This document shows, one piece after another, positions 9,775 through 64,000 of a DNA stretch of 64,000 nucleotides (the stretch's first letter is position 1; each line of letters opens with the position of its first letter). Below the pieces are notes generated by a model. That model was not told the origin of the DNA, did not search any database, and worked only from the letters and a program-made list of their open reading frames with translations. Location of the stretch: positions 62,001 through 126,000 of IMG/VR virus record IMGVR_UViG_3300042889_001272; one strand, 5' to 3'. Position numbers and translations under genes: made by a program.

Positions 9775-10312
9775 AAGCCTATTCGAAGACGACCTTAAAT
9801 GGTTAGTCGACGATGGTGTTCTCATTGACATGCACAAAACTAAATTAGGTGCCAACAAAGATTATATCGTATTGGCTATCATTGTCAATGACAGAACTCC
9901 TGCACATGATCTAGCAAGTTTTATTGAAAACTCTGTGTATGATTTTGAAGATGTAGAAGTCAGCAGTGCCACTGATACAAAAGGTCGATATTTGATTTAT
10001 GTTGAATTAAATCGTGATCCTGGTGCATTTAAAACTATTAACGGTATTTTAAATGACAGTAAAAAATTAACAGGCATTGAAGAATGGAAATTCAAAGGCA
10101 TGGGAATGTCTAACATGGTTCCCTTTGACGAAGAAACATTTAATTCTTCTATTATAGTTGACCCCATTGAATATGATCGACTTCATCCCGAAGTTGAAGA
10201 AACTACAAAAGAAGAACCAAGCACAGAAGCCGAACCCAGCGAAGAAGAAATGCAACAAGAAGCAGTAAGAGAATCTATCAAAAATAGATTAAAATTTTTA
10301 ATGAGTTATTAA
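9728..10312 (+). CDS. Hypothetical protein
   Basis: ORF; start uncertain (9728 or 9737). Confidence 0.65.
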   Translation: MPQMKPKNQHHNNLSESLFEDDLKWLVDDGVLIDMHKTKLGANKDYIVLAIIVNDRTPAHDLASFIENSVYDFEDVEVSSATDTKGRYLIYVELNRDPGAFKTINGILNDSKKLTGIEEWKFKGMGMSNMVPFDEETFNSSIIVDPIEYDRLHPEVEETTKEEPSTEAEPSEEEMQQEAVRESIKNRLKFLMSY

Positions 10313-21214: not shown

Positions 21215-21577
21215 ATGGAACGCATCTACGAACTACCTATTTCATTTACATTTGAGCAAGTTATTGCATTTGGAAATCTAACTGGAGATAATAGCCCTGT
21301 TCATAGTATAGATGGAGTTGTACAAGGCGGATTTATTTTAAGTATGTTACCACAATGGTTAAAAATGACCAATGATGGACAGGAATTCATTAAAGATTCA
21401 AAACAAGCTGTAAGCATAATGCTAGATGTTAAATTTAGAAACAAATTAATTTCAAACCAAAATATTTTTGTTAAATTTACATACACTCCAAATACAAGAT
21501 TCACTAAAATACTTTGGAAAATATATGACAACGAAAAAGAGTATTGTAGCGGTAATTGGATAATTCATAAAATTTGA
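21215..21577 (+). CDS. MaoC-like hot-dog fold dehydratase/hydratase
   Basis: FTFEQVIAFGNLTGDNSPVH (D-x4-H hydratase motif), VVQGGF, VKFRNKL. Confidence 0.65.
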   Translation: MERIYELPISFTFEQVIAFGNLTGDNSPVHSIDGVVQGGFILSMLPQWLKMTNDGQEFIKDSKQAVSIMLDVKFRNKLISNQNIFVKFTYTPNTRFTKILWKIYDNEKEYCSGNWIIHKI

Positions 21578-21602
21578 CATAAATTGAATTATAGTGTATA
21601 AT
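21574..21602 (+). promoter_or_regulatory. sigma70-type promoter
   Basis: TTGACA (21574) - 17 nt - TATAAT (21597). Confidence 0.85.
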
Positions 21603-48314: not shown

Positions 48315-48598
48315 TCAAATTCCTAAAAGAACAAACGTGGCAGTTCTGGTTTGAATGGATTGCCACAGCTATATTAATAATTGGTGTTTACCAATCTTCT
48401 TTTAATATATTTCCATCTTACTTATGGTTTTCTTTTGTAGGAAACTTGTGTTGGATGGTGCTAGGAATTGTTTGGAAAAAATGGAGTTTGTTTGTTGTTG
48501 AATTGATCATTGTTGGTATATACTTTGTAGGATTAGTAAATGAATACTTAAAGGACGAAGTAGAAATGATTATGGCATTGATTAGGACTGTAATATGA
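48311..48598 (+). CDS. Small membrane protein (PnuC-like half?)
   Basis: TTG start; three hydrophobic helices, GNLCWMVLG..WKKWSL. Confidence 0.45.
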   Translation: MIKFLKEQTWQFWFEWIATAILIIGVYQSSFNIFPSYLWFSFVGNLCWMVLGIVWKKWSLFVVELIIVGIYFVGLVNEYLKDEVEMIMALIRTVI

Positions 48599-51325: not shown

Positions 51326-51354
51326 TTGACACTACAACCTAAATACGCTATACT
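51326..51354 (+). promoter_or_regulatory. sigma70-type promoter with nested TAAATA
   Basis: TTGACA (51326) - 17 nt - TATACT (51349); TAAATA at 51340. Confidence 0.8.
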
Positions 51355-51373
51355 AGCGTATAGGAGAGAAATA

Positions 51374-52111
51374 ATGAAAGACGCAATTTTTGATATCGTG
51401 CGACACACAGCCAGCCTCGGCTTCTTTGACTTGGCAAAGATCACAGGCACTGATGCTAGCACAGAAATATGGACCTGTGACGAAAAACGTAACGTAGTCC
51501 TTGAAGCCGAATTAAAGAATCCAGTGGCATCCTTGATTGGTGAAGTTGGTTTAGGTAATTTAAGTTTCTTAAATGGTTTAACTGGTCTTTATAATAAAGA
51601 TGGCGTTGAAGTCGAAGTATCTACAGTAAGTAAAAATGGTGCAGAGATTCCAGATTACTTTATCTTTAAAGATGCTGATGGCAACAACGACAAGTATCGT
51701 TTGATGAGTAAAGAAATCATCGACACACAACTGCAACAAAGCAAGTTTAAAGGTGTTAAGTGGGATATTAGCTTTGAACCAAAGAAAAGTAAAGTAAGTG
51801 AAATGAGTCAGAAGGCAGGTATCTATTCTGCATTAGAGCCTACATTTACTGTTAAGACAGAAAACAATGATCTTGTTTTCATCTTCGGTAGTGACACAGG
51901 TGGCAGTCACTTTGGACGTATGACCTTTGCAAGTAATGTAACAGGCTCTATGAAAGAAGGTTATTCTTGGCCCATTGACAAGTTTTTGAGTATTCTTAAA
52001 CTTGGTATGAGTGGCGAATGTAAAGTACAATTCTGTCAAGTGGCTTGTATGATTACCATTGACAGCGGCACTGGTGTTTATAACTACATCTTGCCGGGAC
52101 ATACTCGTTAA
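51374..52111 (+). CDS. Putative sliding clamp (T4 gp45-like)
   Basis: AGGAG SD and ATG 51374; ~245 aa alternating alpha/beta; follows PolB; C-terminal GVYNYIL. Confidence 0.55.
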   Translation: MKDAIFDIVRHTASLGFFDLAKITGTDASTEIWTCDEKRNVVLEAELKNPVASLIGEVGLGNLSFLNGLTGLYNKDGVEVEVSTVSKNGAEIPDYFIFKDADGNNDKYRLMSKEIIDTQLQQSKFKGVKWDISFEPKKSKVSEMSQKAGIYSALEPTFTVKTENNDLVFIFGSDTGGSHFGRMTFASNVTGSMKEGYSWPIDKFLSILKLGMSGECKVQFCQVACMITIDSGTGVYNYILPGHTR

Positions 52112-52349: not shown

Positions 52350-52631
52350 ATGACAGATAATCAAACAGAAAAAATTATATCCCTTCTTGAAAATATAGAA
52401 AAGCATCTTCAAGCAATCGATTGGAAATTTTGGAATTTGCATCAACAGTTTGATAAAGAGAAAACAAATCTCGATGTGGAAAATACTGAAAAACCAATCG
52501 AAGAAATAATTGTCAACGATGAACTAGAAAGTCTTGCAGAAATAGTCAGTGCTCCGGCCACTGTTCCTGAGCCTGAAAGACCTGTAGTAAAGCACACGCT
52601 GAAATATCCAAGTATCGAGGTTTTGAAATGA
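52350..52631 (+). CDS. Hypothetical protein
   Basis: ORF; HLQAIDWKFW. Confidence 0.6.
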   Translation: MTDNQTEKIISLLENIEKHLQAIDWKFWNLHQQFDKEKTNLDVENTEKPIEEIIVNDELESLAEIVSAPATVPEPERPVVKHTLKYPSIEVLK

Positions 52632-53002
52632 AAAAAATGATTTGGGTTACCTTTCAAAAAGAAGGCATACACAAGTATCCAGCAGCTCTAACTGATCCTA
52701 ACTTGGCTACTGGCGATGAATATGATGTCAGCTTTCTTGGCTATCCCCACAGACATACATTTCATTTCAAAGTATCCATTGAAGTATTTCATGATGATCG
52801 TGACATTGAATTTATTCAATTCAAACGCTGGTTGGAAAATCTTTATAAAGGTGCTATACTAGCATTAGACTTTAAAAGTTGCGAGATGATCGCAGAAGAT
52901 TTGTACACACAAATTAATGCTCGCCATCCCGGTAGAGCAGTGACAATAGAAGTAAGTGAGGACGGTGAAAATGGATGCTACATTCAATTTGAACAGAAGT
53001 AA
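52628..53002 (+). CDS. queD: QueD-like (6-carboxytetrahydropterin synthase, T-fold) protein
   Basis: GYPHRHTFHF, IEFIQFKR, KSCEMIAEDL, VSEDGEN; context with folE, queE and a TGT-fold gene. Confidence 0.65.
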   Translation: MKKMIWVTFQKEGIHKYPAALTDPNLATGDEYDVSFLGYPHRHTFHFKVSIEVFHDDRDIEFIQFKRWLENLYKGAILALDFKSCEMIAEDLYTQINARHPGRAVTIEVSEDGENGCYIQFEQK

Positions 53003-53048
53003 GGTGAGAACAGTGCATAACAATAATAATTCTTATGTTAGTCGTGCT

Positions 53049-53372
53049 ATGATCAATATCAACGATATCAAATATGATTTGTTGAAGATCAGTGAAATGT
53101 ACGATGGAGTGTTACAAGATGGTCTTGGACACATTGCCGCAGACATGTTCTGGAAATATCTACAAGATATGTGTGACCAACGTTGGATGCACAGTTTCGA
53201 AATTACAGAGATTGTGTTGAAAGAACACAGTTACACATACGACATTAATATCCAAATTACTAATGATCGTACTCCAAAGAAATTAAAGATCCATGTGGGT
53301 CTTTATAAGAGTGCATGGTTTGACTTGTCTAAGTCAATGAAAAATACAGCAAACGGTTACGTAAATGCTTAA
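53049..53372 (+). CDS. Hypothetical protein
   Basis: ORF; start uncertain (53004 GTG or 53049 ATG). Confidence 0.55.
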   Translation: MININDIKYDLLKISEMYDGVLQDGLGHIAADMFWKYLQDMCDQRWMHSFEITEIVLKEHSYTYDINIQITNDRTPKKLKIHVGLYKSAWFDLSKSMKNTANGYVNA

Positions 53373-54927
53373 TCATAAAACCCGTGTAGATTTAAAAACT
53401 CGCAATAAAGACTATGCAGTCTTTTTGCCAAGTATCAGCGGGTTCTATCAAACCTTTATTAGTAAACAACAAAAAGAAGAATTCGTTCCTTTGAATAGAA
53501 TTCCAAAAGAGTTTGAAAACGGTATTGAAGGTATGAACTTCCTTAACAAGGAACAGGCATATTTTTACTACCCCGATGCGCTATATTCTGCAGGTCACGC
53601 ACAGTTAGATGTGACCAAAAGCTATGTTGAAGAATCCATGGTTCAACAACGTGATAAAACTAACCCCGATAGTTTTATCCTTGGCGACAGTGGCGGGTTC
53701 CAGATTGGTAAAGGTGTTATTAACTTTGACTGGCAGCACTTCTGGGAGAAGCAGGGCGATGCAGGTTATGTAGGTGCCGCGGATAAAACCCGTATGGCAA
53801 TTCTTAACTGGCTAGAGTTCACTGCTGATTATAGCATGGTACTTGACTTGCCAACTTGGAGTGCCGCGCCTATTAACCAAGCACGTACAGGACTTAAAGA
53901 CTTTGGCGATTGCCTACGTGGAACATTGTTTAACAACGATTTCTTCTTAAAACATCGTCAGGGTAAGACTAAGTTCCTAAACGTGCTACAAGGTGGTACT
54001 AATGAGGATGCTGACACTTGGTATGAAGCTGTCAAGCATTATCCATTTGAAGGCTGGGCCATGGGTGGTAATAACATGAAGGACGCAGACTTGATGTTAC
54101 GTAGACTTGTCAAACTACGTGATGAAAAATTACTGGAACCAGGACGCGATGTTATTCACTTCTTGGGTACTAGTAAACTTGAATTGGCTTGTTTGTTAAC
54201 TGCGGTTCAACGCAATTTACGTGAGCACGTTAATCCTAATATGAAGATTACGTTTGACTGTGCTAGTCCATTTTTAGCCACTGCTTATGGTCAGGCTTAC
54301 ACACAGCACGTTCATCGTAATAATCGTTTTAGTTACATTATGGATAAGGCCATTGATGACAGACGTCTTGCTGGTAGTGATACGCCATGGCCTTGGAATA
54401 GTCCTGTGGGCGAGCGTATGACCATGGGCGATGCTTGTTACTATAAGCCAGGTGATTTGAATAAGTTGGGTAAAGAAAGTAGAACATCTTGGGATAGTTT
54501 TGCTTACTTCTTAATGATGGGACATAACGTGTATCAACACATTGAATCAGTGCAACGTGCCAATGCGTTAAATGATACTGCCTGTGTTTTACATAAACCT
54601 GACCCTGGACATTGGCATCCTACTAAAGGCACCAACGGTGAACTTAGTAACTGGGTTCCACGCAATGTTATCTACATCACAGAATTAGTTAATCGTGTGT
54701 TTACCAGTGAAACACCTTTTACTGAACTTGATAGAGCTTCTAAGTTACTTGCCGACTTTAACAATAAGAAAACTCTTAAGACCAATGCCAAAGCCAACAA
54801 CATGCTTTTCGAAATTAAAGATTCGAAAACAGGCGAAAAGATCATTGACAAAGGCAGCGACAACGATTCTGCCATCGTTGATGACTGGGATCTAACCGAA
54901 GCCGAAAATATTTTAAAAGCCGCATAA
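53365..54927 (+). CDS. TGT-fold transglycosylase (DpdA-like, probably inserts 7-deazaguanine into DNA)
   Basis: LGDSGGFQ catalytic motif, MVLDLP, LNVLQG, GWAMGG, IHFLGTS, TFDCAS. Confidence 0.75.
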   Translation: MLNHKTRVDLKTRNKDYAVFLPSISGFYQTFISKQQKEEFVPLNRIPKEFENGIEGMNFLNKEQAYFYYPDALYSAGHAQLDVTKSYVEESMVQQRDKTNPDSFILGDSGGFQIGKGVINFDWQHFWEKQGDAGYVGAADKTRMAILNWLEFTADYSMVLDLPTWSAAPINQARTGLKDFGDCLRGTLFNNDFFLKHRQGKTKFLNVLQGGTNEDADTWYEAVKHYPFEGWAMGGNNMKDADLMLRRLVKLRDEKLLEPGRDVIHFLGTSKLELACLLTAVQRNLREHVNPNMKITFDCASPFLATAYGQAYTQHVHRNNRFSYIMDKAIDDRRLAGSDTPWPWNSPVGERMTMGDACYYKPGDLNKLGKESRTSWDSFAYFLMMGHNVYQHIESVQRANALNDTACVLHKPDPGHWHPTKGTNGELSNWVPRNVIYITELVNRVFTSETPFTELDRASKLLADFNNKKTLKTNAKANNMLFEIKDSKTGEKIIDKGSDNDSAIVDDWDLTEAENILKAA

Positions 54928-55811
54928 TGAAAGCACTTATAATTGGTCTAGGTTTCGGCCAGGCTGTTTATCTGCCTGTGCTAACTCAACTTGGTTATGA
55001 AGTAATTACTGTTGACATGGATACATCTAAAGGTGCTGATTTTTCAGACATTGAAGATGCTATTCGTGTTCACAGTAAATTTGATACTGTGAACATATGT
55101 ACTCCAAACTTTACGCATATCAAATTAGCAAGAGCTGTGGCTCCTCACGCGAATATTGTATTTGTTGAAAAGCCAGGTGTTGTTAACAGCGAAGCATGGC
55201 GATGGCTTTGTGCTGATTATCCCGGGACTCGTTTTATGATGGTAAAGAATAATCAATATCGTGATACTATTACACAGTTTAAAACACTTGCAGATCAAAG
55301 TCATACTGTTAGGGTTGTTTGGAATAATAAAAATCGTATTCCAAATCCAGGTAGTTGGTTTACTACAAAGGAACTGGCCTTTGGTGGTGTTAGTCGAGAT
55401 TTGATACCTCATATGTTAAGTTACTATGTAGCATTGACAGACTACACAAAAGGTAATAAACTATATGGTAACGCAACACAAAGACATGAACTCAAAGATC
55501 TTATTGATACTGATTATGGTAGCGTCAATCATGATGGCACTTACAATGTCGACGACTTCTGTGAATTTGAATTCAAAAACGGAGATACTACTTGGATATT
55601 AACTGCCAATTGGAAAGATGACAAAGCAGATGATGTTTATATTAGTTTTGACATGAAGAATTCTGCTGTTAGACATAAGTTAGGATTATGTCCAGAATCT
55701 GCATACAAAGCAATGATAGAAAACGCTGTTACAAACCTAAATAATGATATGTTCTGGAAAGAACAATTACAACAGGATCTTTGGATTCACCGACAAATAG
55801 AAAACTTATGA
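54927..55811 (+). CDS. Gfo/Idh/MocA family oxidoreductase
   Basis: IIGLGFG, ICTPNFTH, VFVEKP, GGVSRDLIPH. Confidence 0.8.
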   Translation: MKALIIGLGFGQAVYLPVLTQLGYEVITVDMDTSKGADFSDIEDAIRVHSKFDTVNICTPNFTHIKLARAVAPHANIVFVEKPGVVNSEAWRWLCADYPGTRFMMVKNNQYRDTITQFKTLADQSHTVRVVWNNKNRIPNPGSWFTTKELAFGGVSRDLIPHMLSYYVALTDYTKGNKLYGNATQRHELKDLIDTDYGSVNHDGTYNVDDFCEFEFKNGDTTWILTANWKDDKADDVYISFDMKNSAVRHKLGLCPESAYKAMIENAVTNLNNDMFWKEQLQQDLWIHRQIENL

Positions 55812-56956
55812 ACGCACGATCAATAACACGTAATACTCTAGCTGGTATTACTACTAGTCTTGCTATGGTGCCGGAAGTTGTTGCCTTTGCGCTGTTAGCA
55901 CACGTCAATCCTTTAGTGGGATTATATGCCGCAGTAATACTGGGATTAGTCACTGCTATATTTGGCGGACGTCCCGGACTTATCAGTGGAGGCGCCGGTA
56001 GCCTTGCAGTTGTCAGCGTGGCATTAGTAATCACACACGGAGTTGAATATCTATTTGCTTGTATTGTACTCATGGGCATTATACAATTCGCATTTGGTGC
56101 ATTTAAGTTAGGCAAGTTAATTAAATTAGTTAGTCCTAGTGTAATGACTGGTTTTGTCAACGGCTTGGCACTAGTAATTTTTACAGCACAGTTTCATCAA
56201 ATTCCTACACAAGGATTTGAATTGTATTATATGTTAGGTTTAATTGTAGTTACAATAGTTGGCGTAATTGTTGCTCCTATGATTACACGACATATTCCTG
56301 GTAGTTTGTTGGGCATTGTTCTTGTAACTGCTGTGGTATATATCTTTGGTATCAGTACAAAGACAGTGGGAGACATTGCACATATCAGCGGAGCATTACC
56401 TAGTTTCCATTTGCCCGATGTTCCTTTTACATTAGAAACACTACAGATAGTATTACCTTATAGTTTGATCCTTGCGGCAATTGGTTTGATTGAAACTTTA
56501 CTCACTGCTAACTTAGTAGATAAGACAATTGGCGGAGTTAATCAACCCAATAAAGAAAGCATAGCACAAGGTGCAGGTAATGTGTTGACAGGCCTGTTTG
56601 GTGGTATGGGAGGTTGTGCTATGATTGGACAAACAGTTATTAATTTAGAAGCCGGTGGACATCAGCGTTTGGCAGGGGTGGTTGAAGCATTAGCTATTCT
56701 TGCTTACATTGTATTTGCTAGTTTTATAATTGAATCGATTCCTATTGCGGCTTTAATTGGTGTAATGTGTGTGGTATGTTATCATACATTTGATTGGAAC
56801 AGTTTGAACTTTAAGGACAAACCTAAAGAAGATATTGCTGTCATGCTAACTGTCACTGTAACTACATTTATATTCAATTTGGCTTTTGCCGTTTTGTTAG
56901 GCATTTTGCTAACAAGTATGTTATACTACTGGAAACACGTTAAAGAAGCAACATGA
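55808..56956 (+). CDS. SulP/SLC26 family anion transporter lacking a STAS domain
   Basis: LAGITTSLAMVPEVVAFA, GLYAA, GGRPGLISG, NKESIAQGAGN, GGCAMIGQT. Confidence 0.88.
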   Translation: MNARSITRNTLAGITTSLAMVPEVVAFALLAHVNPLVGLYAAVILGLVTAIFGGRPGLISGGAGSLAVVSVALVITHGVEYLFACIVLMGIIQFAFGAFKLGKLIKLVSPSVMTGFVNGLALVIFTAQFHQIPTQGFELYYMLGLIVVTIVGVIVAPMITRHIPGSLLGIVLVTAVVYIFGISTKTVGDIAHISGALPSFHLPDVPFTLETLQIVLPYSLILAAIGLIETLLTANLVDKTIGGVNQPNKESIAQGAGNVLTGLFGGMGGCAMIGQTVINLEAGGHQRLAGVVEALAILAYIVFASFIIESIPIAALIGVMCVVCYHTFDWNSLNFKDKPKEDIAVMLTVTVTTFIFNLAFAVLLGILLTSMLYYWKHVKEAT

Positions 56957-57858
56957 CAAGAATATTACAAACAACAGGCACTGGCAATTTTACAGAAACA
57001 ACTTGGATTAATCCAAAATGCAGTGACGATGAAATTACTGTACAAAGTATTATGACCGGTGTATGTCGCAGTGACATTGATATGATGGAAGGCAACTTCG
57101 GTCCTTTGCCAATTAATATGCAAGGGCACGAAGGCTTGGGTCGAGTAATTAAAGTAGGTAAAAACATTGAAGATGTAGTTGTAGGGGATATCGTAGCTAC
57201 TAGAGGTGAACCTGCGTATGCAGACAAATACAATGTTCGTAATAGAGAATATGTTGTTGTGCCAGAAGCACATCCAAAATATATATTAGAACCAGTTGCC
57301 TGCGGGATTAATATTATCCAGCAGCCTATTAGAGAAATTGCAGAACGTGCTGGATCAACTAAACGTTTACTGATACTGGGCAGTGGTTTCCTTGCGTGGG
57401 TTGCTTTCAACACTATTCTAATACATCACTTGGATTTTGAAATCACAGTAGTAGGTAACAGCAATAAAGAACTATGGGGAGAAATCCTGCATCAAAACTA
57501 TCAAGGTACTTTTGATGTCATTATTGACTTGAGCAGTAAGATGGATGTTTTTGAGAAACCTATTCTAAATAATGAAGCATTAGTGGTGTTTGGAAGTCAA
57601 AAACAAGTTAGCACAGACTTCAGTAATTTACTTTGGAAGGCTTGTACAATGATATTCCCAAGTCCGAGAACCGAAAACTTTTATCATCGCATGAAAGATG
57701 CGGCTTACTGGATTGAGCAAGGTGATATTGTAGTTGACAGCTTCTGGACTCGAGCGTATAATAGAGACACTGAATGGCAACAAGCATTTGCTGATGGCCT
57801 TGACCGCCCTGCTGGTTATAGCAGGGGATACATTTATTGGAACGAAAATGGCAATTGA
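56953..57858 (+). CDS. MDR-family (alcohol/sugar) dehydrogenase
   Basis: TGVCRSD, GHEGLG, VVVGDIV, LEPVAC, ILGSGFLA. Confidence 0.8.
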   Translation: MTRILQTTGTGNFTETTWINPKCSDDEITVQSIMTGVCRSDIDMMEGNFGPLPINMQGHEGLGRVIKVGKNIEDVVVGDIVATRGEPAYADKYNVRNREYVVVPEAHPKYILEPVACGINIIQQPIREIAERAGSTKRLLILGSGFLAWVAFNTILIHHLDFEITVVGNSNKELWGEILHQNYQGTFDVIIDLSSKMDVFEKPILNNEALVVFGSQKQVSTDFSNLLWKACTMIFPSPRTENFYHRMKDAAYWIEQGDIVVDSFWTRAYNRDTEWQQAFADGLDRPAGYSRGYIYWNENGN

Positions 57859-58357
57859 CACAATGGGCCGTAAGGCAACAACTTATTTTATTGGCACGGA
57901 AGTAGAACGTACTGCTATGTATGGCGAACGTACATTGTTCGTAGTGGGCGTTCAGCCTGTGGATAAAATTGTTAGTCTACTCAATGAACATAAGTTACGT
58001 CATGTTTATCTTGGTACAAGTCAAAGTTTTACTCCCACAGACTACGATGACTGGAAAGCCTGGGATAAGATGATCATCGAATTGTTAGATGCAGGTTACT
58101 GGGTAACTCTTGACTTTGGAGTAGAATATGCTGATACTTTTAACGAAGAAGGTTGGAGTGAGTACAATACGTTTATTCCTATGATCAGTGTTAAACTTCC
58201 GTATATTAAATTATATAACTATAACGCTACACTAAAGATTGATGACACTACTTGGGGTCATAGCAATCCAGGTGTATGGTGTCATAGTCTGCACGACTTA
58301 ATGGACAGAAAAGTTTACACAGACTGGAAGGATTATGTCGGAGACGAAAATGTCTAA
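57848..58357 (+). CDS. Conserved phage hypothetical protein
   Basis: ATG 57848; FIGTEVERT...TLFVVG, KIDD..WGHSNPGVW. Confidence 0.65.
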   Translation: MAIDTMGRKATTYFIGTEVERTAMYGERTLFVVGVQPVDKIVSLLNEHKLRHVYLGTSQSFTPTDYDDWKAWDKMIIELLDAGYWVTLDFGVEYADTFNEEGWSEYNTFIPMISVKLPYIKLYNYNATLKIDDTTWGHSNPGVWCHSLHDLMDRKVYTDWKDYVGDENV

Positions 58358-59423
58358 AGTATTTTTAGTTGATTTAGAAGCAGTTAGCACTCGCTATACT
58401 GGACAGTGGAAAGATCACGTTCCACAATTACTTAAAGAGGCAGGACACGATGTCAACATTATATCAGGTCCTACGGACATTCCTAGTGCTACCACTCCTG
58501 GGGCATTTCTCAACTTTGGCGGAACTAATATCTACAAGGCTAGTCAAGTTGAACAATTGGGTCGTTTATTTTGTAACGGAACCATTCGCTCAGGTGATCA
58601 CTTTATCTTTACTGATGCTTGGCATCCGGGCATTATAAATCTAAAGTACATGAGTGAGTTGTTGGGTATTCCAGTAACCACACATGGACTGTGGCATGCT
58701 GGCAGTTATGATCCTCAAGACTTTCTCGGACGCTTAGTTGGAGATAAACCTTGGGTAAGGCATGCAGAGAAAAGTTTTTACCATGCGTTTGATCACAACT
58801 ACTTTGCCACAGACTTTCACATTGATATGTTCTGCTTAAATCTATTACGAACCTCATCGGGTTTTTATAAAGACTGGATCAATAGTGGAAAGATTGTTCG
58901 TACCGGTTGGCCCATGGAGTATATGGAAGATACGTTAACAATGTATAAGAACATGACCAAACGTGATCTTATTTTGTTTCCACATCGCATTGCTCCAGAA
59001 AAACAAGTTGAGATATTCCGAGACTTAGCTACACACTTACCACAATATGAATTTGTAGTGTGTCAAGATCAGCAACTTACCAAGCACCAGTACCATACAT
59101 TATTGAGTCAAGCTAAGATGGTGTTTAGTTGTAGTCTACAAGAGACATTAGGCATTGGATGTTACGAAGGTGCTGTAGTAGATGCTATCCCAATGGTACC
59201 AGATAGACTTAGTTATACAGAAATGTATTTTGATACATTTAAATATAAGAGTGAATGGACAGAGTCTTGGGATGCTTACAATGTCTATCGTCCAGACTTA
59301 TGTCGTGCTATTATTACCCACATGGATTATTACAATACTAGATTACAGCAACTTAAAGAACAAGCAAGTTATTTGACTATGAATTTCTTTAGCGCGAAAG
59401 ATTTATTAAATAATTTAAAATGA
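58350..59423 (+). CDS. GT-B glycosyltransferase
   Basis: FTDAWHP, GLWHAGSYD, FPHRIAPEKQ, LQETLGIGCYEG, PMVPDRLSYTE (GT4-like ExFG..xE signature). Confidence 0.75.
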   Translation: MSKVFLVDLEAVSTRYTGQWKDHVPQLLKEAGHDVNIISGPTDIPSATTPGAFLNFGGTNIYKASQVEQLGRLFCNGTIRSGDHFIFTDAWHPGIINLKYMSELLGIPVTTHGLWHAGSYDPQDFLGRLVGDKPWVRHAEKSFYHAFDHNYFATDFHIDMFCLNLLRTSSGFYKDWINSGKIVRTGWPMEYMEDTLTMYKNMTKRDLILFPHRIAPEKQVEIFRDLATHLPQYEFVVCQDQQLTKHQYHTLLSQAKMVFSCSLQETLGIGCYEGAVVDAIPMVPDRLSYTEMYFDTFKYKSEWTESWDAYNVYRPDLCRAIITHMDYYNTRLQQLKEQASYLTMNFFSAKDLLNNLK

Positions 59424-60328
59424 TTTATACTAGCCAAGATAATTGGTATAAATGGAGTTATGGCGACACTCTTTGGGGCAGGCAAGTCGGCAACTTAAAA
59501 TGGAATACCAGTTACAAATGTACAAATGTACAGCATGTTGGTTCGTTTAAAGAAGAAATGTTGGCGGCTGCTCGCAGTACAATGGACCACTTTAGTGGAT
59601 TAAAGCCATGTGTACATTTTAGTGGAGGCTTGGATAGTGAGTTGGTGTTACGTTCATATATCAATATAGGTGCTGATCCTATTGTAAACATCTTTAGGTT
59701 TGAAGATCACATCAATGAATATGACGTAAGTTATGCTATTGTTATATGCGAAATACTTGACGTAAAGTATAATATTATTGATTTTAATATTAAAAAGTTT
59801 TTTGAAAATGATGCTGAATCTATTAGTGATATATCGCAAATAGACAGGCCACGGGGACTTCCTCAATTAAAGTTTTTAGATTATACTGAAGGATTTTCTG
59901 TTTTAGGTATTGGCGATCCGAGATGGACTCGTAGTGTAAAAGATAATACTCCTTGGATATTACTCGATCAAGAGCATGATACTGGATGGGACAAATATAT
60001 TTTATACAAAGACATTCCTGCTATTGCACAATGGTTTAAATGGACTCCTGAATTGGTACTAGCATATACTGAACTAGATTGGTTTAAGAATCTTGTGATA
60101 AACAACAAGTGGACAGGCAGAGAAGGTGTGACATCTACTAAGATCACAGGATACCGAGAAGCATATCCTGACTTATTACAACGAGATAAAAAAACTGGTA
60201 TGGAACCCGTTGACATTTTAATAAATGAGTTTGAGAAATTTCTAGAAAAGAAAAATAATGGACTGATTTATAGGCAAGTAGTACCCAGGACATTAGAAGA
60301 ACTTAGGAAAGAAATATTAAATGATTAA
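59420..60328 (+). CDS. PP-loop (SGGxDS) ATP pyrophosphatase-like protein
   Basis: VHFSGGLDSELV; otherwise divergent; AT-rich. Confidence 0.5.
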   Translation: MIYTSQDNWYKWSYGDTLWGRQVGNLKWNTSYKCTNVQHVGSFKEEMLAAARSTMDHFSGLKPCVHFSGGLDSELVLRSYINIGADPIVNIFRFEDHINEYDVSYAIVICEILDVKYNIIDFNIKKFFENDAESISDISQIDRPRGLPQLKFLDYTEGFSVLGIGDPRWTRSVKDNTPWILLDQEHDTGWDKYILYKDIPAIAQWFKWTPELVLAYTELDWFKNLVINNKWTGREGVTSTKITGYREAYPDLLQRDKKTGMEPVDILINEFEKFLEKKNNGLIYRQVVPRTLEELRKEILND

Positions 60329-60641
60329 AATACAAAGTTATGGACCAGTGCCGAGCTGGTATCAAGTTGATCAAAGTTATAACCTTCCTAGCATTACCGG
60401 AGTAGTTCAATGGAATGGTGCTAGCAAATGTTTTGAAGTTAGCAACGGTGTTAGTTGGCAACGAATAGATAATACTGTACAAATTAGCAATACTTATGAT
60501 ATGAGTATGATTGCTCAATGGGCAATGAAGAAGATGCAAGAGGAAGAAGAAACTAAGAAACTGCGTAGTAAATACCCAGCACTAGATGAAGCATACAATC
60601 ACTTAGATTTGATTAAAGCATTAGTTACAGAACAAAAATGA
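60321..60641 (+). CDS. Hypothetical protein
   Basis: ORF. Confidence 0.6.
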   Translation: MIKIQSYGPVPSWYQVDQSYNLPSITGVVQWNGASKCFEVSNGVSWQRIDNTVQISNTYDMSMIAQWAMKKMQEEEETKKLRSKYPALDEAYNHLDLIKALVTEQK

Positions 60642-61108
60642 TATTCAATAAAGTTAAAGACTTAAAAGCCAAGGGACTAAAGATAGGAATTACCTTTAGT
60701 ACCTTTGACTTGCTTCACGCTGGACATATTGCTATGTTAGCTGAAGCAAAGAATCACTGCGATTATTTAATCTGCGGCATTCAAACTGACCCTACTATTG
60801 ATAGACCCGACAGCAAGAATCCTCCTGTTCAGAGTATTGTCGAAAGACAAATACAGTTGTCGGCAGTTCGCTATGTTGATGAAACTGTAGTATATCAAAC
60901 TGAAAAAGATTTAGAAGATATTTTACTTACATTGCCTATCGATGTTCGTATCCTAGGCATCGAATACGAACAAAAAGACTTTACTGGTAGAGATATTTGT
61001 TATGATAGAGGCATCGAGTTAATATTCAACAAACGAGATCATAGCTTCAGTTCGAGTAATTTGCGGAAACGTGTAGCACAGGCAGAACTAATCAAGGAAA
61101 TAAAATGA
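60638..61108 (+). CDS. Cytidylyltransferase (TagD/RfaE-like)
   Basis: STFDLLHAGH, YLICGIQTD, PVQSIVER, YVDE, RDHSFSSS. Confidence 0.88.
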   Translation: MIFNKVKDLKAKGLKIGITFSTFDLLHAGHIAMLAEAKNHCDYLICGIQTDPTIDRPDSKNPPVQSIVERQIQLSAVRYVDETVVYQTEKDLEDILLTLPIDVRILGIEYEQKDFTGRDICYDRGIELIFNKRDHSFSSSNLRKRVAQAELIKEIK

Positions 61109-61905
61109 AAATTGGTATTATAGGACATGGATTTGTAGGCAGAGCTATTGCCAATGCACATGATCGGGACAACTTGTTGATCAATGATCCAAAACTATTT
61201 GACAGTGCCAGTATTGAAGAAATCAAAGATAACACAGACTGGATATACATTGCGGTGCCTACACCTATGTCAGACGCAGGTGAATTGGACACTAGTATAT
61301 TAGAAACAGTGCTAGACAGTTTAATTGATTATAAAGGTCTGGTTATTTCTAAATGCACTGCATTGCCTGACTATTACATTTCAGCTAAAAAGCATTATAA
61401 TTTTAGACTCGTGCATGTGCCTGAATTTTTAACTGCTGCCAATGCCAACATAGACTATATGACTCCAGAGATGATTGTCATGGGCGGCGGCATCGACGAC
61501 TGTCATTATTATAAAGACGTTGTGGTACAAGCAGATAAAACAAATACCATGGCAACTAAATTCATTGCCACTGACATTGGAACAGCAAGCGCCATGAAAT
61601 ATTATGCCAATAGTTTCCTAGCAACTAAAGTTGTATTCAACAATCAATTTGCGGCATGGTGTACTAGTCAAGGTATCGATTGGAACAACTTATCTGCTAT
61701 TAGCAAATTAGATAAAAGATTGGGTAATACACATTGGGCGGTGCCGGGCCCTGACGGCATGTTTGGTTATGGCGGATATTGTTTCCCAAAAGATGTCAGT
61801 GCGCTAACACACAGTGAACACGGCGAATCATTGTCTTTATTAAAACATCAATTCGAAGTAAACGAAAAAATTAGGTCTATTAAATCGTTGACAGAACCTA
61901 AATAA
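61105..61905 (+). CDS. UDP-glucose/GDP-mannose dehydrogenase-like (no C-terminal domain)
   Basis: GIIGHGFVG, IAVPTP, VPEFL, MKYYANSFLATKV, GYGGYCFPKD. Confidence 0.82.
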   Translation: MKIGIIGHGFVGRAIANAHDRDNLLINDPKLFDSASIEEIKDNTDWIYIAVPTPMSDAGELDTSILETVLDSLIDYKGLVISKCTALPDYYISAKKHYNFRLVHVPEFLTAANANIDYMTPEMIVMGGGIDDCHYYKDVVVQADKTNTMATKFIATDIGTASAMKYYANSFLATKVVFNNQFAAWCTSQGIDWNNLSAISKLDKRLGNTHWAVPGPDGMFGYGGYCFPKDVSALTHSEHGESLSLLKHQFEVNEKIRSIKSLTEPK

Positions 61906-61916
61906 TACTGTATAAT
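61888..61916 (+). promoter_or_regulatory. sigma70-type promoter with nested TAAATA
   Basis: TTGACA (61888) - 17 nt - TATAAT (61911); TAAATA at 61899. Confidence 0.85.
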
Positions 61917-61963
61917 AATACAATATGGCAACTACCTCTGCCTTAACATAGGAGAAAATTATA

Positions 61964-62794
61964 ATGACAGCAACATTCAAAAAAAACGAATCCATTCATG
62001 GAACTTCCTTTGCGTTTAAAAAAGACAATATTGTCGACTCTACGGAAATCACAACCGTGAATGAAACAGGTCTGGACGCAATGGCAGGCGATGGTGGATA
62101 CCAAGAAGCGTATCTCGGTGATCATCTTCGATTTAAGATGAAACGTGAGGGCAAACGTTTTTGGGCAGGCGATAACATCAGCGATTACCTGCACGAAGGC
62201 GATATAGAAAAACTAATCGACGAAGCAACTCCAGCATTTGAACAAGTGCTAGATAGTTTGCTAATTGATCGTGAGAATGATCCTAACAGTAAAGGTACTG
62301 CAAGACGACTTGCTAAAATGTACTTTAATGAAATTATGGCAGGAAGATATGAACAAGCTCCAGACGCAACAGCATTTCCAAATGATTCGGCAGACCGTTA
62401 TGAAGGCATGCTCGTGGTTCGCAGTGAACTTCGTAGTATGTGTAGTCATCATCACCAACCCGTTACTGGGGTTGCTTATATTGGCATTATCGCGGCAGAG
62501 AAACTGATCGGTCTTAGCAAGTACACTCGTATCGCACAATGGTGTGCTAGGCGTGGTACTTTACAAGAAGAACTTTGCAATGACATTGCCCGTGAGATTA
62601 GCAAAGCTACTGATTCGGAAAACGTAGCTGTGTATATCCAGGCTGTTCATGGATGCTGTGAGAATAGGGGTATTATGGCACATAGCAGTTTGACTCAAAC
62701 TACTGTACTTAAAGGATTCTTTAAAGAAGATCCGGGTGCAAAGAAAGAATTCTTTGATAATATTAAACTACAACAGGAGTTTGCACCAAGATGA
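61964..62794 (+). CDS. folE: GTP cyclohydrolase I
   Basis: TARRLAKMY, SMCSHHHQP, IGLSKYTR, LQEEL, HGCCENRG. Confidence 0.92.
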   Translation: MTATFKKNESIHGTSFAFKKDNIVDSTEITTVNETGLDAMAGDGGYQEAYLGDHLRFKMKREGKRFWAGDNISDYLHEGDIEKLIDEATPAFEQVLDSLLIDRENDPNSKGTARRLAKMYFNEIMAGRYEQAPDATAFPNDSADRYEGMLVVRSELRSMCSHHHQPVTGVAYIGIIAAEKLIGLSKYTRIAQWCARRGTLQEELCNDIAREISKATDSENVAVYIQAVHGCCENRGIMAHSSLTQTTVLKGFFKEDPGAKKEFFDNIKLQQEFAPR

Positions 62795-62994
62795 AAGATC
62801 CAGTAATAGAATCCAAAGCCAATGAATTAAAGTCGTTGGTTGATCAAGTTAATCAAATTATGAGTGATCTACAAGACATGAATGTAGAAGTTAGAATTGC
62901 ATATATTGATAAAAATGAACATAATCCTACTAATGAAAAATTAAGACAGGGCATCAAACTTTGGCGAGTAGAAGAGCACAATGGCTACCTCTAA
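62791..62994 (+). CDS. Hypothetical protein
   Basis: Coupled ORF. Confidence 0.55.
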   Translation: MKDPVIESKANELKSLVDQVNQIMSDLQDMNVEVRIAYIDKNEHNPTNEKLRQGIKLWRVEEHNGYL

Positions 62995-63346
62995 TCCAGG
63001 TTACGGTGCTATTCCACCTGGGCCACCTGGGCCACCTGGGCCACCTGGGCCGCAAGGATTAAGCGGACAGATTCTAACTGCTAATGGTATGAATGGTAGT
63101 AATTGGTCGCCGCAACATACTAATGCTGTTCAAATTGGTAGTCCTGATCCTGTTATTACATTTAAATTAGACGGTGACATCGTAACCAAAGCAGGAACTA
63201 TTACAGCAGATGATTGGATTTCTGTTATCAAAGTTATGAAACAGTTGATCATGGATATGAGCCAAGATGAGGAATTAGTATCTAAATATCCATATATACG
63301 AGATGCGGCACATATATGGATGATTAACAAACTTAAAGGAGAATAA
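62981..63346 (+). CDS. Hypothetical protein with short (PPG)n tract
   Basis: IPPGPPGPPGPPGPQG. Confidence 0.6.
   Translation: MATSNPGYGAIPPGPPGPPGPPGPQGLSGQILTANGMNGSNWSPQHTNAVQIGSPDPVITFKLDGDIVTKAGTITADDWISVIKVMKQLIMDMSQDEELVSKYPYIRDAAHIWMINKLKGE
63014..63051 (+). repeat. Perfect 9-nt tandem repeat
   Basis: (CCACCTGGG)x4 plus CC. Confidence 0.95.
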
Positions 63347-63347
63347 T

Positions 63348-63608
63348 ATGGCAACACGCAAAAAGAAATCAGACAGTATTACTTTAGAAATGCCCGGCAC
63401 TATTGGGGGTGCAAAAATAGTATTTGCAGAACCCACAGTGGTCAAAGGTAGTCATTTAACTGTTACTACTCACTCAGATGGCAAAACTACACTGGCGTGG
63501 GATGACGAAGCATTGCTTAATGATGTACGTGCGGCATTACTAAAAGCAGAGAGTACCATTCCTGCAACCACAGAAACTACACCAAAGCGATCTAAAAAAT
63601 CAAAATAA
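63348..63608 (+). CDS. Hypothetical protein
   Basis: AAGGAG SD; ORF. Confidence 0.65.
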   Translation: MATRKKKSDSITLEMPGTIGGAKIVFAEPTVVKGSHLTVTTHSDGKTTLAWDDEALLNDVRAALLKAESTIPATTETTPKRSKKSK

Positions 63609-63609
63609 A

Positions 63610-63879
63610 ATGCCAGCGGTAAAACATCAGCAGATGAAAACACAACAACTGATTTCTCTTAATTTTTGGGAATCTAAACAATTAGAATATTGGCTGGCTG
63701 ACAATTTTCCAGATTGTCGAGTTCGTTGCCTTTATGATACTTGGTCCGGACATCCAGAAGTAGTCGAATGGTATGCCATAGAAGGTGATATAACAGTTGA
63801 CATGGAGTGCCTTCTGAAGTTAAAATACGGTAACAAATTAAAAAGCTCAAACGCAGGAATAAGACATGGACAAAATTAA
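63610..63879 (+). CDS. Hypothetical protein
   Basis: ORF. Confidence 0.45.
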
Positions 63880-64000
63880 AGTAAGCGAAATATTTTACAG
63901 CGCACAAGGCGAAGGTCGCTTTATTGGCGTACCCAGTGTGTTCTTTAGAACATTCGGCTGTAACTTTAAATGTGGCGGCTTTGGCTTGCCCGTAGGTCAA
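63866..64000 (+). CDS. queE: 7-carboxy-7-deazaguanine synthase QueE (3'-truncated by window edge)
   Basis: [36 protein letters not shown]; not in ORF track. Confidence 0.85.

What the first reader, a model, noticed from the sequence alone, without database searches (positions are those of the whole stretch)
52628..64000. 7-deazaguanine DNA-modification genes interleaved with a sugar pathway: possible new hypermodified base
Seen: queD-like, a TGT-fold gene with DSGGFQ, folE and queE, interleaved with a Gfo/Idh/MocA oxidoreductase, an MDR dehydrogenase, a GT-B glycosyltransferase, a cytidylyltransferase and a UDP-sugar-dehydrogenase-like gene, all next to PolB and the clamp. Established: FolE, QueD and QueE make CDG (QueC converts it to preQ0), and phage DpdA inserts 7-deazaguanines into DNA. 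Inference: the sugar enzymes may build an activated sugar or polyol that is added to the deazaguanine, or to another base. I know of no described glycosylated 7-deazaguanine in phage DNA.
Basis: partly seen in the sequence, partly recalled or inferred. Interest (0 to 1): 0.76.

Follow-up and report, generated by a model that had tools for sequence, protein, structure and literature searches.

The report
Deazaguanine DNA module with built-in glycosyltransferase
A large lake-water phage carries the genes that swap guanine in its DNA for 7-deazaguanine, and this gene set always includes a sugar-transferring enzyme, so its DNA may carry a sugar-decorated guanine substitute of a kind not yet described.

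Summary
The 'queD-like' ORF is DpdL, the QueD paralog proposed as the 7-carboxy-7-deazaguanine decarboxylase. The true QueD lies outside the window, and the 235-kb record has no QueC. The DSGGFQ protein misses Pfam TGT and DpdA, but its model matches bacterial TGT (Z 18.7).

Main result: in all 43 related viral contigs with at least 6 kb downstream of the TGT-like gene, a GT4-type glycosyltransferase sits in the module (34 of the window's type, 9 of a divergent type). It also lies beside DpdL, in different gene orders, in the cultured phages PA5oct, ACP17, X1, BUDD, Phosso and BUCT-ZZ01. Cellulophaga phage phiST has DpdL, no detectable homolog of this glycosyltransferase and plain 7-deazaguanine DNA. 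The other sugar genes (Gfo+MDR, SulP, nucleotidyltransferase, truncated UGDH, PP-loop) occur only in some lineages and sit inside the module.

Best reading: a DpdL-type deazaguanine system extended by glycosylation of the base. The chemistry is unproven. PA5oct has a modified G of unknown structure, so the idea can be tested on a cultured phage. This is a new variant of a known kind.

The parts
48595..51240 (+). Family B DNA polymerase, upstream neighbour of the module
   Evidence: PF00136 7e-36 and PF03104 4e-15. It is syntenic in 72 related loci.
51326..52111 (+). Clamp-like protein; the likely start is M17 at 51374
   Evidence: phrog_12062. It is 35% identical (2e-50) to a Phosso protein annotated as a sliding clamp. 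No independent check was made.
52628..53002 (+).
   Evidence: Motif LGYPHRHTF matches LxxxHRHxF (PMC10516641). tblastn gives 36% to phiST CGPG_00067, 57% to ACP17 and 76% to Phosso. Atlas neighbours are PTPS-like. It is present in 43 of 43 loci with at least 6 kb downstream.
52956..53372 (+). g138, an unknown protein that follows DpdL in 18 loci
   Evidence: tblastn matrix. No family hit.
53365..54927 (+). TGT-fold, DpdA-like transglycosylase (520 aa)
   Evidence: DSGGFQ (D108) and FDCASP (D298) are invariant in 23 homologs. The AF2 model has pLDDT 83. The top 50 Foldseek PDB hits are all bacterial TGT (E 6e-9), and VIA gives Z 18.7 over 300 residues. It is 37% identical to PA5oct EST35_0316 in the same position. 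No Pfam TGT or DpdA hit.
54927..55811 (+). Gfo/Idh/MocA oxidoreductase (accessory)
   Evidence: PF01408 2.5e-6, above the cut-off. It occurs in 8 of 80 loci, always with the MDR gene and always between the TGT-like gene and g165.
55808..56956 (+). SulP-family permease without a STAS domain (accessory cassette)
   Evidence: PF00916 2e-47 and TIGR00815 1e-53. Bacterial homologs are 48-57% identical and 516-522 aa long. It occurs in 2 other loci. A related phage skips exactly 55807 to 56953, and an independent lake sample holds an identical contig across the gene.
56953..57858 (+). Zn-type MDR dehydrogenase (accessory)
   Evidence: ADH_N 1.6e-10 and phrog_2640. It occurs in 8 of 80 loci, together with Gfo.
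57734..57762 (+). Perfect sigma-70 consensus promoter ahead of g165 and the glycosyltransferase
   Evidence: TTGACA-N17-TATAAT, 12 of 12. The window has 5 perfect sites against 0.09 expected. Sites with 0-1 mismatch are enriched upstream of g165 homologs, 19 of 70 against 20 of 400 random windows.
57848..58357 (+). g165, a conserved core protein of unknown function
   Evidence: Present in 39 of 43 loci and in ACP17 and PA5oct. 4690 homologs, none with a Pfam domain. Invariant residues include E18, E20, K130, D132 and D133. The model has pLDDT 88 with no clear PDB match; there is weak QueE-like similarity (TM 0.60; Z 6.0-6.4).
58350..59423 (+). GT4-type (GT-B) glycosyltransferase, type A, a core gene
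   Evidence: 44% identical to PA5oct EST35_0317, 48% to Phosso and 33% to ACP17. Its homologs pass Pfam PF00534: X1 at 45.5 bits and type B at 27 bits. hhalign against type B gives probability 96.9%. The EX7E and PHR..KQ motifs are invariant in 50 sequences. Atlas neighbours are GT4. A glycosyltransferase is present in 43 of 43 loci.
59420..60328 (+). PP-loop ATPase (SGGLDS motif), an accessory orphan
   Evidence: Motif. Weak hits to QueC, NAD synthase and LarE models (E about 0.007). It occurs in 2 other loci. No relative among isolated phages.
60321..60641 (+). g106, unknown accessory protein
   Evidence: Present in 6 loci. No family hit.
60638..61108 (+). Small nucleotidyltransferase of the HldE-domain-II/TagD type (accessory)
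   Evidence: PF01467 6e-11, TIGR02199 2e-22, TIGR01518 1e-15 and phrog_7878 1e-32. It occurs in 10 loci, with either glycosyltransferase type.
61105..61905 (+). Truncated nucleotide-sugar-dehydrogenase-like protein (accessory)
   Evidence: PF00984 and PF03721. TIGR03026 covers model positions 65-297 of 413, so the C-terminal UDP-binding domain is absent. The catalytic-Cys motif GYGGYCFPKD is present. It occurs in 11 loci and directly follows the glycosyltransferase in L026, L048 and L080.
61888..61916 (+). Perfect sigma-70 consensus promoter ahead of folE
61964..62794 (+). GTP cyclohydrolase I (FolE) with an N-terminal extension of about 90 aa
   Evidence: PF01227 3e-39 and NF006824 9e-40.
63866..64000 (+). 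QueE (7-carboxy-7-deazaguanine synthase), first 45 codons; the gene runs on to G000:C1:126726
   Evidence: Translation. The full 286 aa are read from the genome. Five QueE NCBIfam models hit, at 3.6e-12 to 2.7e-7.

Best explanation
This is a DpdL-type 7-deazaguanine DNA-modification module that has a glycosyltransferase as an integral part.

Inferred from the gene families: FolE, QueD (encoded elsewhere in the genome) and QueE convert GTP to 7-carboxy-7-deazaguanine (CDG). A phage SAM synthetase two genes after queE probably supplies SAM. There is no QueC, so the pathway stops before preQ0. DpdL then converts CDG to 7-deazaguanine; this is proposed in the literature but not shown. The large TGT-fold enzyme exchanges guanine in phage DNA for the deazapurine.

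My inference, from gene linkage only: the GT4-type, probably retaining, glycosyltransferase then transfers a sugar from a nucleotide sugar onto that base or a derivative of it, with the conserved unknown protein g165 taking part. Lineage-specific genes inside the module change the sugar or its donor, so the decoration differs between phage lineages. In the window's lineage these are Gfo+MDR, with or without SulP, a small nucleotidyltransferase, a UGDH-like enzyme without its UDP-binding domain, and a PP-loop ATPase. The divergent transferase type instead comes with a GalE-like epimerase. The presumed purpose is protection of the DNA from restriction enzymes and from defences that recognise plain deazaguanine.
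For: Pathway genes. No QueC. SAM synthetase two genes after queE.

DpdL identity: the signature motif plus homology to phiST and ACP17 DpdL. phiST has FolE, QueD, QueE, DpdL and DpdA3, and its DNA carries dDG in place of dG (PMC10516641).

TGT fold and conserved Asp pair.

Glycosyltransferase family.

Linkage: a glycosyltransferase is in the module in 43 of 43 loci. It lies next to DpdL in PA5oct, ACP17, Phosso and BUCT-ZZ01, and within about 3 kb of it in X1, BUDD and BCSR5, in different gene orders. The 13 genes from 52350 to 61905 overlap or abut. Sugar-nucleotide enzymes co-vary with transferase type: a GalE-like SDR accompanies 7 of 9 type B genes, and BUCT-ZZ01 has two GT4-like genes.

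No alternative acceptor route: no ThyA-type hydroxymethylase, TET/JBP or C5-methylase in the 235-kb record.

Experimental hints: PA5oct DNA resists five G-containing restriction enzymes and is attacked by nucleases that sense hypermodified DNA (PMC12191111). DpdL plus DpdA of ACP17 alone gave no dDG in E. coli, and the authors noted that other enzymes may be needed.
Against: There is no chemical evidence for a sugar on the base in any of these phages. 7-Deazaguanine has no hydroxyl, and GT4 enzymes normally glycosylate oxygen, so the acceptor atom is unexplained; it could be C7/C8, N2, a CDG carboxylate or an undescribed hydroxylated derivative. DpdL activity itself is unproven. The 43 loci share ancestry, so they amount to roughly six independent lineages, not 43. 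The window's own transferase and TGT-like proteins miss their Pfam models. The record is estimated to be only 66% complete, so absences are weak evidence. Complex prediction gave no answer.
Confidence: 0.5

Rival explanations
1. The DNA carries only plain 7-deazaguanine (or CDG), as in phiST. The glycosyltransferase and the sugar genes act on something else, such as another DNA base, a phage or host protein, or the cell envelope, and sit here only because the gene order was inherited.
For: phiST makes dDG with DpdL and no detectable homolog of this glycosyltransferase. 7-Deazaguanine offers no usual acceptor group. A distant homolog of the transferase in PhiXhv-12 sits with GlmS-like and deacetylase genes and no DpdL. 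The accessory sugar genes are patchy.
Against: The adjacency of the transferase to DpdL or the TGT-like gene persists through at least five different gene orders in unrelated phage groups. It is present in 43 of 43 loci. No other known base-hydroxymethylation route was found. The module lies among replication genes behind sigma-70-like promoters, not among structural or lysis genes.
Confidence: 0.25
2. Glycosylation, or another step carried out by DpdL, g165 and the transferase, happens on the free base or a nucleotide precursor. The unusually large TGT-fold enzyme then inserts the finished bulky base, as eukaryotic TGT inserts queuine, or the polymerase incorporates a modified nucleotide.
For: The TGT-like protein is 520 aa against 259 aa for phiST DpdA3. 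Phosphoribosyltransferase genes sit in the type B modules and in BUCT-ZZ01. g165 resembles the QueE fold weakly, which would suit binding of a small deazapurine or pterin. The literature model has DpdL acting on the free base.
Against: The known phage DNA glycosyltransferases act on DNA after replication (established knowledge for T4). The phosphoribosyltransferase could simply salvage the guanine that is released. No dGTPase or nucleotide kinase was seen among the ORFs scanned in and just after the module; the shortest ORFs were not all scanned. The g165 fold match is at background level.
Confidence: 0.17
3. The interleaved sugar genes are auxiliary metabolic genes unrelated to DNA, for example for host surface polysaccharide or anion uptake, and were captured by chance in a hotspot for gene insertion.
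For: SulP is a precise presence/absence cassette. Its nearest relatives are bacterial. The accessory genes differ between close relatives.
Against: In the loci that carry them, they are inserted at two fixed points inside the module, between the TGT-like gene and g165 and between the transferase and folE, and they overlap their neighbours. The UGDH-like gene directly follows the transferase in three distant loci. Gfo+MDR recur in loci whose TGT-like proteins are only about 50% identical to the window's.
Confidence: 0.08

Closest known systems
dDG system of Cellulophaga phage phiST (FolE, QueD, QueE, DpdL, DpdA3; Cui et al. 2023, PMC10516641)
   Same: The same precursor genes, DpdL with the LxxxHRHxF signature, no QueC, a TGT-superfamily enzyme, and a location next to replication genes.
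   Different: The transglycosylase here is twice as long and not detectably similar in sequence to DpdA3 (hhalign probability 10%). This module adds a universal GT4 glycosyltransferase and g165. tblastn finds neither in phiST, and the phiST ORF between its DpdL and DpdA3 is unrelated to g165.
Pseudomonas jumbo phage PA5oct (Wroclawvirus) and its modified G
   Same: The order PolB, clamp-like, TGT-like, glycosyltransferase, DpdL, then QueE is syntenic, with proteins 37-59% identical. PA5oct DNA behaves as G-modified and hypermodified (PMC12191111).
   Different: PA5oct lacks the Gfo, SulP, MDR, PP-loop, nucleotidyltransferase and UGDH-like genes in this region, and its g165 homolog lies 27 kb away. 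The structure of its modified base has not been reported in the papers I could search.
Glucosyl-hydroxymethylcytosine of T-even phages (alpha- and beta-glucosyltransferases)
   Same: The proposed logic is the same: a modified base in DNA is given a sugar by a phage GT-B enzyme, and the sugar pattern varies between lineages.
   Different: The base is a purine analogue, not hmC. The transferase is GT4-like and shows no sequence match to any solved structure, the T4 enzymes included. The acceptor group is unknown.
Mannosyl- and galactosyl-queuosine in vertebrate tRNA (QTMAN/GTDC1, QTGAL)
   Same: These are, from my own knowledge, the only known glycosylated 7-deazaguanines. QTMAN is also a GT4-type GT-B enzyme, and a close relative of the phage transferase has TM 0.74 to a QTMAN-like cluster.
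   Different: The substrate there is RNA, and the sugar goes on the cyclopentenediol of queuosine, which this pathway cannot make. The TM score is no higher than for generic GT4 enzymes (0.80). No QTMAN_N domain hit.
Bacterial Dpd system (DpdA/DpdB/DpdC; dPreQ0 and dADG)
   Same: A TGT-superfamily enzyme inserts a 7-deazaguanine into DNA.
   Different: No DpdB or DpdC was seen here, preQ0 is not made because there is no QueC, and this is a phage counter-defence rather than a host restriction-modification system.

Membership tests
TGT/DpdA superfamily (7-deazaguanine transglycosylases) | TGT-type (beta/alpha)8 barrel fold | tested here: met
   The model has pLDDT 83.4. The 50 best Foldseek PDB hits are all bacterial TGT (E 6e-9), and 188 hits have E below 1e-3. 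VIA gives Z 18.7 over 300 residues.
TGT/DpdA superfamily (7-deazaguanine transglycosylases) | The two catalytic aspartates (DSGGxQ and FDC motifs of TGT) | tested here: met
   D108 in DSGGFQ and D298 in FDCASP are invariant in 23 homologs. Their equivalence to TGT Asp102 and Asp280 is from motif knowledge; I did not inspect a superposition.
TGT/DpdA superfamily (7-deazaguanine transglycosylases) | Match to Pfam TGT (PF01702) or DpdA (PF23859) | tested here: not met
   No Pfam family at E 0.01. PF01702 finds nothing in the whole record. Support comes only from the Atlas, where clusters with TGT or DpdA domains are neighbours by features (0.94 and 0.89). hhalign to ACP17 ASP50403-position protein (ASD50403) gives probability 50% and to phiST DpdA3 10%. 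This is therefore a distinct, unnamed subfamily.
TGT/DpdA superfamily (7-deazaguanine transglycosylases) | Base exchange on DNA | not testable with these tools
   This needs an enzyme assay or LC-MS.
DpdL (QueD paralog, proposed CDG decarboxylase) | Signature LxxxHRHxF in place of the QueD motif CxxxHGH | tested here: met
   LGYPHRHTF in the 124-aa ORF. The signature is as defined in PMC10516641.
DpdL (QueD paralog, proposed CDG decarboxylase) | Homology to the founding members (phiST CGPG_00067, ACP17) | tested here: met
   tblastn gives 36% (4e-11) to phiST and 57% (4e-37) to ACP17.
DpdL (QueD paralog, proposed CDG decarboxylase) | Genome has FolE, QueD and QueE but no QueC | tested here: met
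   The record is about 66% complete, so the absence of QueC is not final.
DpdL (QueD paralog, proposed CDG decarboxylase) | PTPS-like T-fold | tested here: inconclusive
   No Pfam PTPS hit. Atlas neighbours include PTPS clusters (score 0.94), and a close relative's model has TM 0.82 to one of them. No model of this protein itself was made.
DpdL (QueD paralog, proposed CDG decarboxylase) | Decarboxylation of CDG | not testable with these tools
   This is also unproven in the literature.
GT4 / Glycos_transf_1 (GT-B) glycosyltransferases | Match to Pfam PF00534 | tested here: inconclusive
   The window protein does not match. Its homologs do: X1 at 45.5 bits and type B at 27.0 bits, against a cut-off of 26.4. 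They are linked to the window protein by tblastn (1e-18) and by hhalign (96.9%).
GT4 / Glycos_transf_1 (GT-B) glycosyltransferases | EX7E motif in the C-terminal domain | tested here: met
   E265 to E273, within QETLGIGCYE, is invariant in 50 type A sequences, as is PHR....KQ.
GT4 / Glycos_transf_1 (GT-B) glycosyltransferases | Two-Rossmann GT-B fold | tested here: inconclusive
   The evidence is only the Atlas model of a near relative, with TM 0.80 to a GT4 cluster.
Phage DNA glucosyltransferases of T4 (GT63, GT72) | Sequence relationship to T4 alpha- or beta-glucosyltransferase | tested here: not met
   Single-sequence and profile searches of all PDB chains gave nothing. That those chains include the T4 enzymes is from my own knowledge. 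This protein may work like those enzymes but is not a member of their families.
Nucleotide-sugar 6-dehydrogenases (UGDH) | N-terminal, central and C-terminal (UDP-binding) domains plus the catalytic Cys | tested here: not met
   The N-terminal and central domains and the GGxCxxKD cysteine are present. The C-terminal domain is absent, since TIGR03026 is matched only over positions 65-297 of 413.
SulP/SLC26 anion transporters | Transmembrane Sulfate_transp domain followed by a STAS domain | tested here: not met
   The transmembrane domain is present (2e-47). The protein ends at 382 aa, whereas bacterial homologs run to 516-522 aa.

The most novel reading that the evidence does not exclude
A very large group of freshwater and other phages, including the cultured phages PA5oct, ACP17, X1, Phosso and BUCT-ZZ01, replace guanine by a sugar-bearing 7-deazaguanine. 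This would be the first glycosylated purine analogue known in any DNA. The sugar would be attached by a GT4 enzyme to a position that needs unusual chemistry, for example a C- or N-glycoside on the pyrrolopyrimidine ring. Lineage-specific enzymes would then diversify the sugar: oxidation by a UDP-domain-less UGDH acting on the DNA-bound sugar, amidation by the PP-loop enzyme, epimerised donors, or a second sugar.
Probability: 0.4. Interest if true: 0.85.

Novelty: new variant of a known kind. Interest (0 to 1): 0.7.

Why it matters
Eight 7-deazaguanine derivatives are known in phage DNA, and none of them carries a sugar. If the transferase acts on the base, this adds a new chemical class of DNA modification. 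It would also parallel the glucosylation of hydroxymethylcytosine in T-even phages.

It could explain two open observations. One is the unidentified 'modified G' of the therapeutic-candidate phage PA5oct. The other is the failure to reconstitute ACP17 DpdL plus DpdA in E. coli.

The families are large: more than 7,400 TGT-like, at least 8,000 transferase and 4,690 g165 protein clusters in metagenomes. The modification would therefore be common in lakes and would matter for how such phages are sequenced, cloned and restricted. New deazapurine-directed glycosyltransferases would also be useful enzymes.

Tried and rejected
- Sequence searches of the TGT-like protein, the transferase and g165 against PDB, both single-sequence and profile, found nothing.
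- Pfam, PHROG and NCBIfam gave nothing for these three proteins.
- megablast of the region against isolated phages found no match.
- g165 fold searches (Foldseek PDB, AFDB clusters, VIA wide, Atlas, BFVD) found only unnamed homologs and background-level matches. The weak QueE-like and STAS-like similarities are kept as leads only. hhalign of g165 against the phage's own QueE was negative.
- g165 is not related to the phiST protein CGPG_00066, the Phosso 'glycosylase' or the BUCT-ZZ01 exonuclease that sit in comparable positions. The link to the X1 143-aa ORF is unconvincing.
- Complex prediction of the TGT-like protein, the transferase and g165 gave no answer.
- The PP-loop protein is unrelated to the PAPS-reductase-like gene in the X1 module and has no phage relatives.
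- Public runs holding this phage are kept only as contigs, so no read-level sign of a modified G could be sought.
- The supplementary tables of Cui et al. were not available, so I could not see how they classify the ACP17 or PA5oct transglycosylases.

Full report
WHAT IS THERE

The window is bases 62001-126000 of a 235.5-kb IMG/VR virus record, estimated 66% complete. Its DNA is found in lake-water metagenomes. All genes in 48-64 kb are on the + strand. From 52350 to 61905, thirteen ORFs overlap or abut.

- PolB.
- Gfo/Idh/MocA, 54927-55811.
- An MDR Zn-dehydrogenase, 56953-57858.
- A small HldE-II/TagD-type nucleotidyltransferase, 60638-61108.
- A nucleotide-sugar-dehydrogenase-like protein, 61105-61905.
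- FolE, 61964-62794.
- The start of QueE at 63866. The whole 286-aa protein, read from the genome, hits five QueE models.

CORRECTIONS TO THE OBSERVATION

(a) The 124-aa 'queD-like' ORF (52628-53002) has no PTPS hit. It carries LGYPHRHTF, which is exactly the LxxxHRHxF signature that Cui et al. 2023 give for DpdL, the QueD paralog they propose as the CDG decarboxylase. It is 36% identical to the founding phiST protein and 57% to the ACP17 one. The real QueD (PF01242, 2.6e-15) is about 68 kb upstream in the genome.

(b) No QueC was found in the record. The one weak hit lies inside a 998-aa frame and is below the cut-off.

(c) The DSGGFQ protein (53365-54927) is invisible to Pfam TGT and DpdA and to PDB sequence searches. 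An AlphaFold2 model built on 23 homologs (pLDDT 83, pTM 0.84) matches only bacterial tRNA-guanine transglycosylases at the top: Foldseek E 6e-9 with 188 hits below 1e-3, and VIA Z 18.7 over 300 residues. The aspartates of DSGGFQ and FDCASP are invariant.

One is a SulP permease without a STAS domain (55808-56956). One is a conserved 169-aa protein that I call g165 (57848-58357). One is a PP-loop ATPase with SGGLDS (59420-60328).

(e) The UGDH-like protein keeps the catalytic-cysteine motif but lacks the UDP-binding domain.

THE GLYCOSYLTRANSFERASE

The 357-aa protein (58350-59423) has no Pfam hit of its own. It is, however, homologous to proteins that pass the Glycos_transf_1 threshold:
- Xanthomonas phage X1: 45.5 bits.
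- A divergent 'type B' form from related contigs: 27 bits, linked to the window type by hhalign at 96.9% probability.

Across 50 type A sequences the GT4 hallmarks PHR....KQ and EX7E are invariant. Atlas neighbours are GT4 clusters. I accept it as a GT4-like GT-B transferase. Its fold was not modelled here.

COMPARATIVE GENOMICS, THE MAIN RESULT

The TGT-like protein, the transferase and g165 each have thousands of homologs in metagenomes, none with a Pfam annotation. I fetched eighty viral contigs through the TGT-like protein.

Their common order is PolB, clamp-like, TGT-like, g165, DpdL, (g138), transferase, FolE, then QueE. Among the 43 loci with at least 6 kb downstream:
- DpdL is present in 43.
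- g165 is present in 39.
- A transferase is present in all 43: 34 of type A and 9 of type B.
- Seven of the nine type B genes are followed by a GalE-like epimerase/dehydratase (PF01370, 3e-54).

These loci share descent, so the stronger argument comes from cultured phages with different gene orders:
- PA5oct: TGT-like, transferase, DpdL.
- ACP17: QueD, FolE, g165, TGT-like, transferase, DpdL, QueE as one block.
- X1: FolE, PP-loop, two unknowns, transferase, 'TGT', DpdL, QueE.
- Phosso: clamp, unknown, DpdL, transferase, unknown, FolE, with the TGT-like gene elsewhere.
- The cyanophage BUCT-ZZ01: QueE, phosphoribosyltransferase, unknown, QueD, FolE, a GT4-like gene, a 416-aa protein, DpdL, type B transferase.

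By contrast, phiST has DpdL and no detectable homolog of this transferase, and its DNA carries plain dDG in place of dG. A more distant homolog of the transferase (28% identity) in PhiXhv-12 lies in an unrelated sugar context. The link therefore holds for the closer family only.

THE OTHER SUGAR GENES ARE ACCESSORY

Their counts among the 80 fetched viral loci are:
- Gfo+MDR: 8 loci.
- SulP: 2 loci.
- PP-loop: 2 loci.
- Nucleotidyltransferase: 10 loci.
- UGDH-like: 11 loci.

In the loci that carry them, they enter at two fixed points inside the module. Gfo+MDR recur in loci whose TGT-like proteins are only about 50% identical to the window's, and the UGDH-like gene directly follows the transferase in three distant loci.

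SulP is a clean cassette. A related phage in a metatranscriptome run joins 55807 to 56953 exactly, while an independent lake sample has an identical contig across the gene. Its relatives are bacterial, 48-57% identical, and carry the STAS domain that the phage copy lacks.

WHAT ELSE BEARS ON THE MECHANISM

The record shows no ThyA-type hydroxymethylase, TET/JBP dioxygenase, C5-methyltransferase or second GT1-family hit. No known pyrimidine acceptor route is therefore visible.

A SAM synthetase lies two genes after QueE, which fits heavy use of the radical-SAM step.

Perfect sigma-70 consensus promoters stand before g165/transferase and before folE. There are five in the window against 0.09 expected, and near-perfect sites are enriched before g165, queE and the clamp-like gene in related loci. 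This suggests transcription by the host polymerase.

g165 folds confidently (pLDDT 88) but has no clear structural relative. A weak, repeated resemblance to QueE (Atlas TM 0.60; VIA Z 6.0-6.4), without the Fe-S cysteines and without sequence support, is a lead only.

LITERATURE

[quoted passage not shown] The authors inferred a modified G from QueE and a PTPS gene but did not identify the base (PMC12191111).

Cui et al. could not obtain dDG from ACP17 or phiST DpdL plus DpdA in E. coli and noted that other enzymes may be needed.

No paper in the held library mentions DpdL together with a glycosyltransferase, or describes a glycosylated deazaguanine in DNA.

INTERPRETATION

Inferred from well-supported family assignments: the module makes CDG from GTP.

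Inferred from the literature and the fold: DpdL processes CDG, and the TGT-fold enzyme puts the deazapurine into DNA (probability about 0.85 that the DNA carries a 7-deazaguanine).

My inference from linkage alone: the transferase and g165 belong to this pathway (about 0.65), and the product is a sugar-bearing deazaguanine (about 0.4-0.5).

The weak point is chemistry. 7-Deazaguanine has no hydroxyl, so either the sugar goes on carbon, nitrogen or a carboxylate, or an undescribed intermediate exists. The order of events (on DNA or before insertion) is open. The lack of a UDP-binding domain in the UGDH-like protein would fit action on a sugar already attached to DNA, but that is speculation.

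VERDICT

This is a new variant of a known kind of system, and it is directly testable in cultured phages.

Noticed in passing
window 55808-56956: A lytic-phage SulP-family permease that lacks the STAS domain of its bacterial relatives. It is a precise presence/absence cassette between the Gfo and MDR genes. Its substrate, and any link to the DNA modification, are unknown.
   Followed up: partly
window 6643-6671, 9861-9888 (-), 21574-21602, 57734-57762, 61888-61916: Five perfect TTGACA-N16-18-TATAAT sites against 0.09 expected by chance. Four are on the coding strand. The TTG 'start' of the 207-aa ORF at 57734 is really the -35 box of one of them.
   Followed up: partly
G000:C1:127064-128164 (L169:1265-2365), just past the window end: A phage-encoded S-adenosylmethionine synthetase (all three MetK domains) lies two genes after queE, followed by a 5'-3' exonuclease as in PA5oct.
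   Followed up: no
L169:8866-9615 (G000:C1:134665-135414): A PhyH-family Fe(II)/2-oxoglutarate dioxygenase (PF05721, 4e-16) lies 9 kb beyond queE. A hydroxylase could in principle create an acceptor group on a base. It is not linked to the module, and I did not check it in relatives.
   Followed up: no
window 62981-63346: A 121-aa ORF with a short collagen-like run (PGPPGPPGPPGPQG) lies between folE and queE. It is conserved in 7 related loci.
   Followed up: no
window 58440-58833: The summed contig depth in two lake metagenomes jumps three- to ninefold over this part of the transferase gene. Many related phages in the same samples share this very conserved N-terminal-domain segment.
   Followed up: partly
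L015:16121-16639 and L171:2093-2554: A phosphoribosyltransferase gene (PF00156) sits inside the type B modules and in cyanophage BUCT-ZZ01. It could salvage the guanine released by base exchange, or make a deazapurine nucleotide.
   Followed up: partly
L171:4010-5353 and L171:7001-8167: BUCT-ZZ01 has two GT4-like genes in its deazaguanine block, which hints at a second sugar.
   Followed up: partly
L013:15672-16322 and L013:16653-17657: One related contig has two radical-SAM proteins between its type B transferase and folE. Weaker copies lie upstream in several other loci.
   Followed up: no
window 61964-62240: FolE carries an N-terminal extension of about 90 residues with no family match. It is conserved in several related loci.
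   Followed up: no
L001:2605-7831: In PA5oct the family B polymerase gene is annotated as split in two by a homing-endonuclease gene. The window's PolB is a single 881-aa ORF.
   Followed up: no
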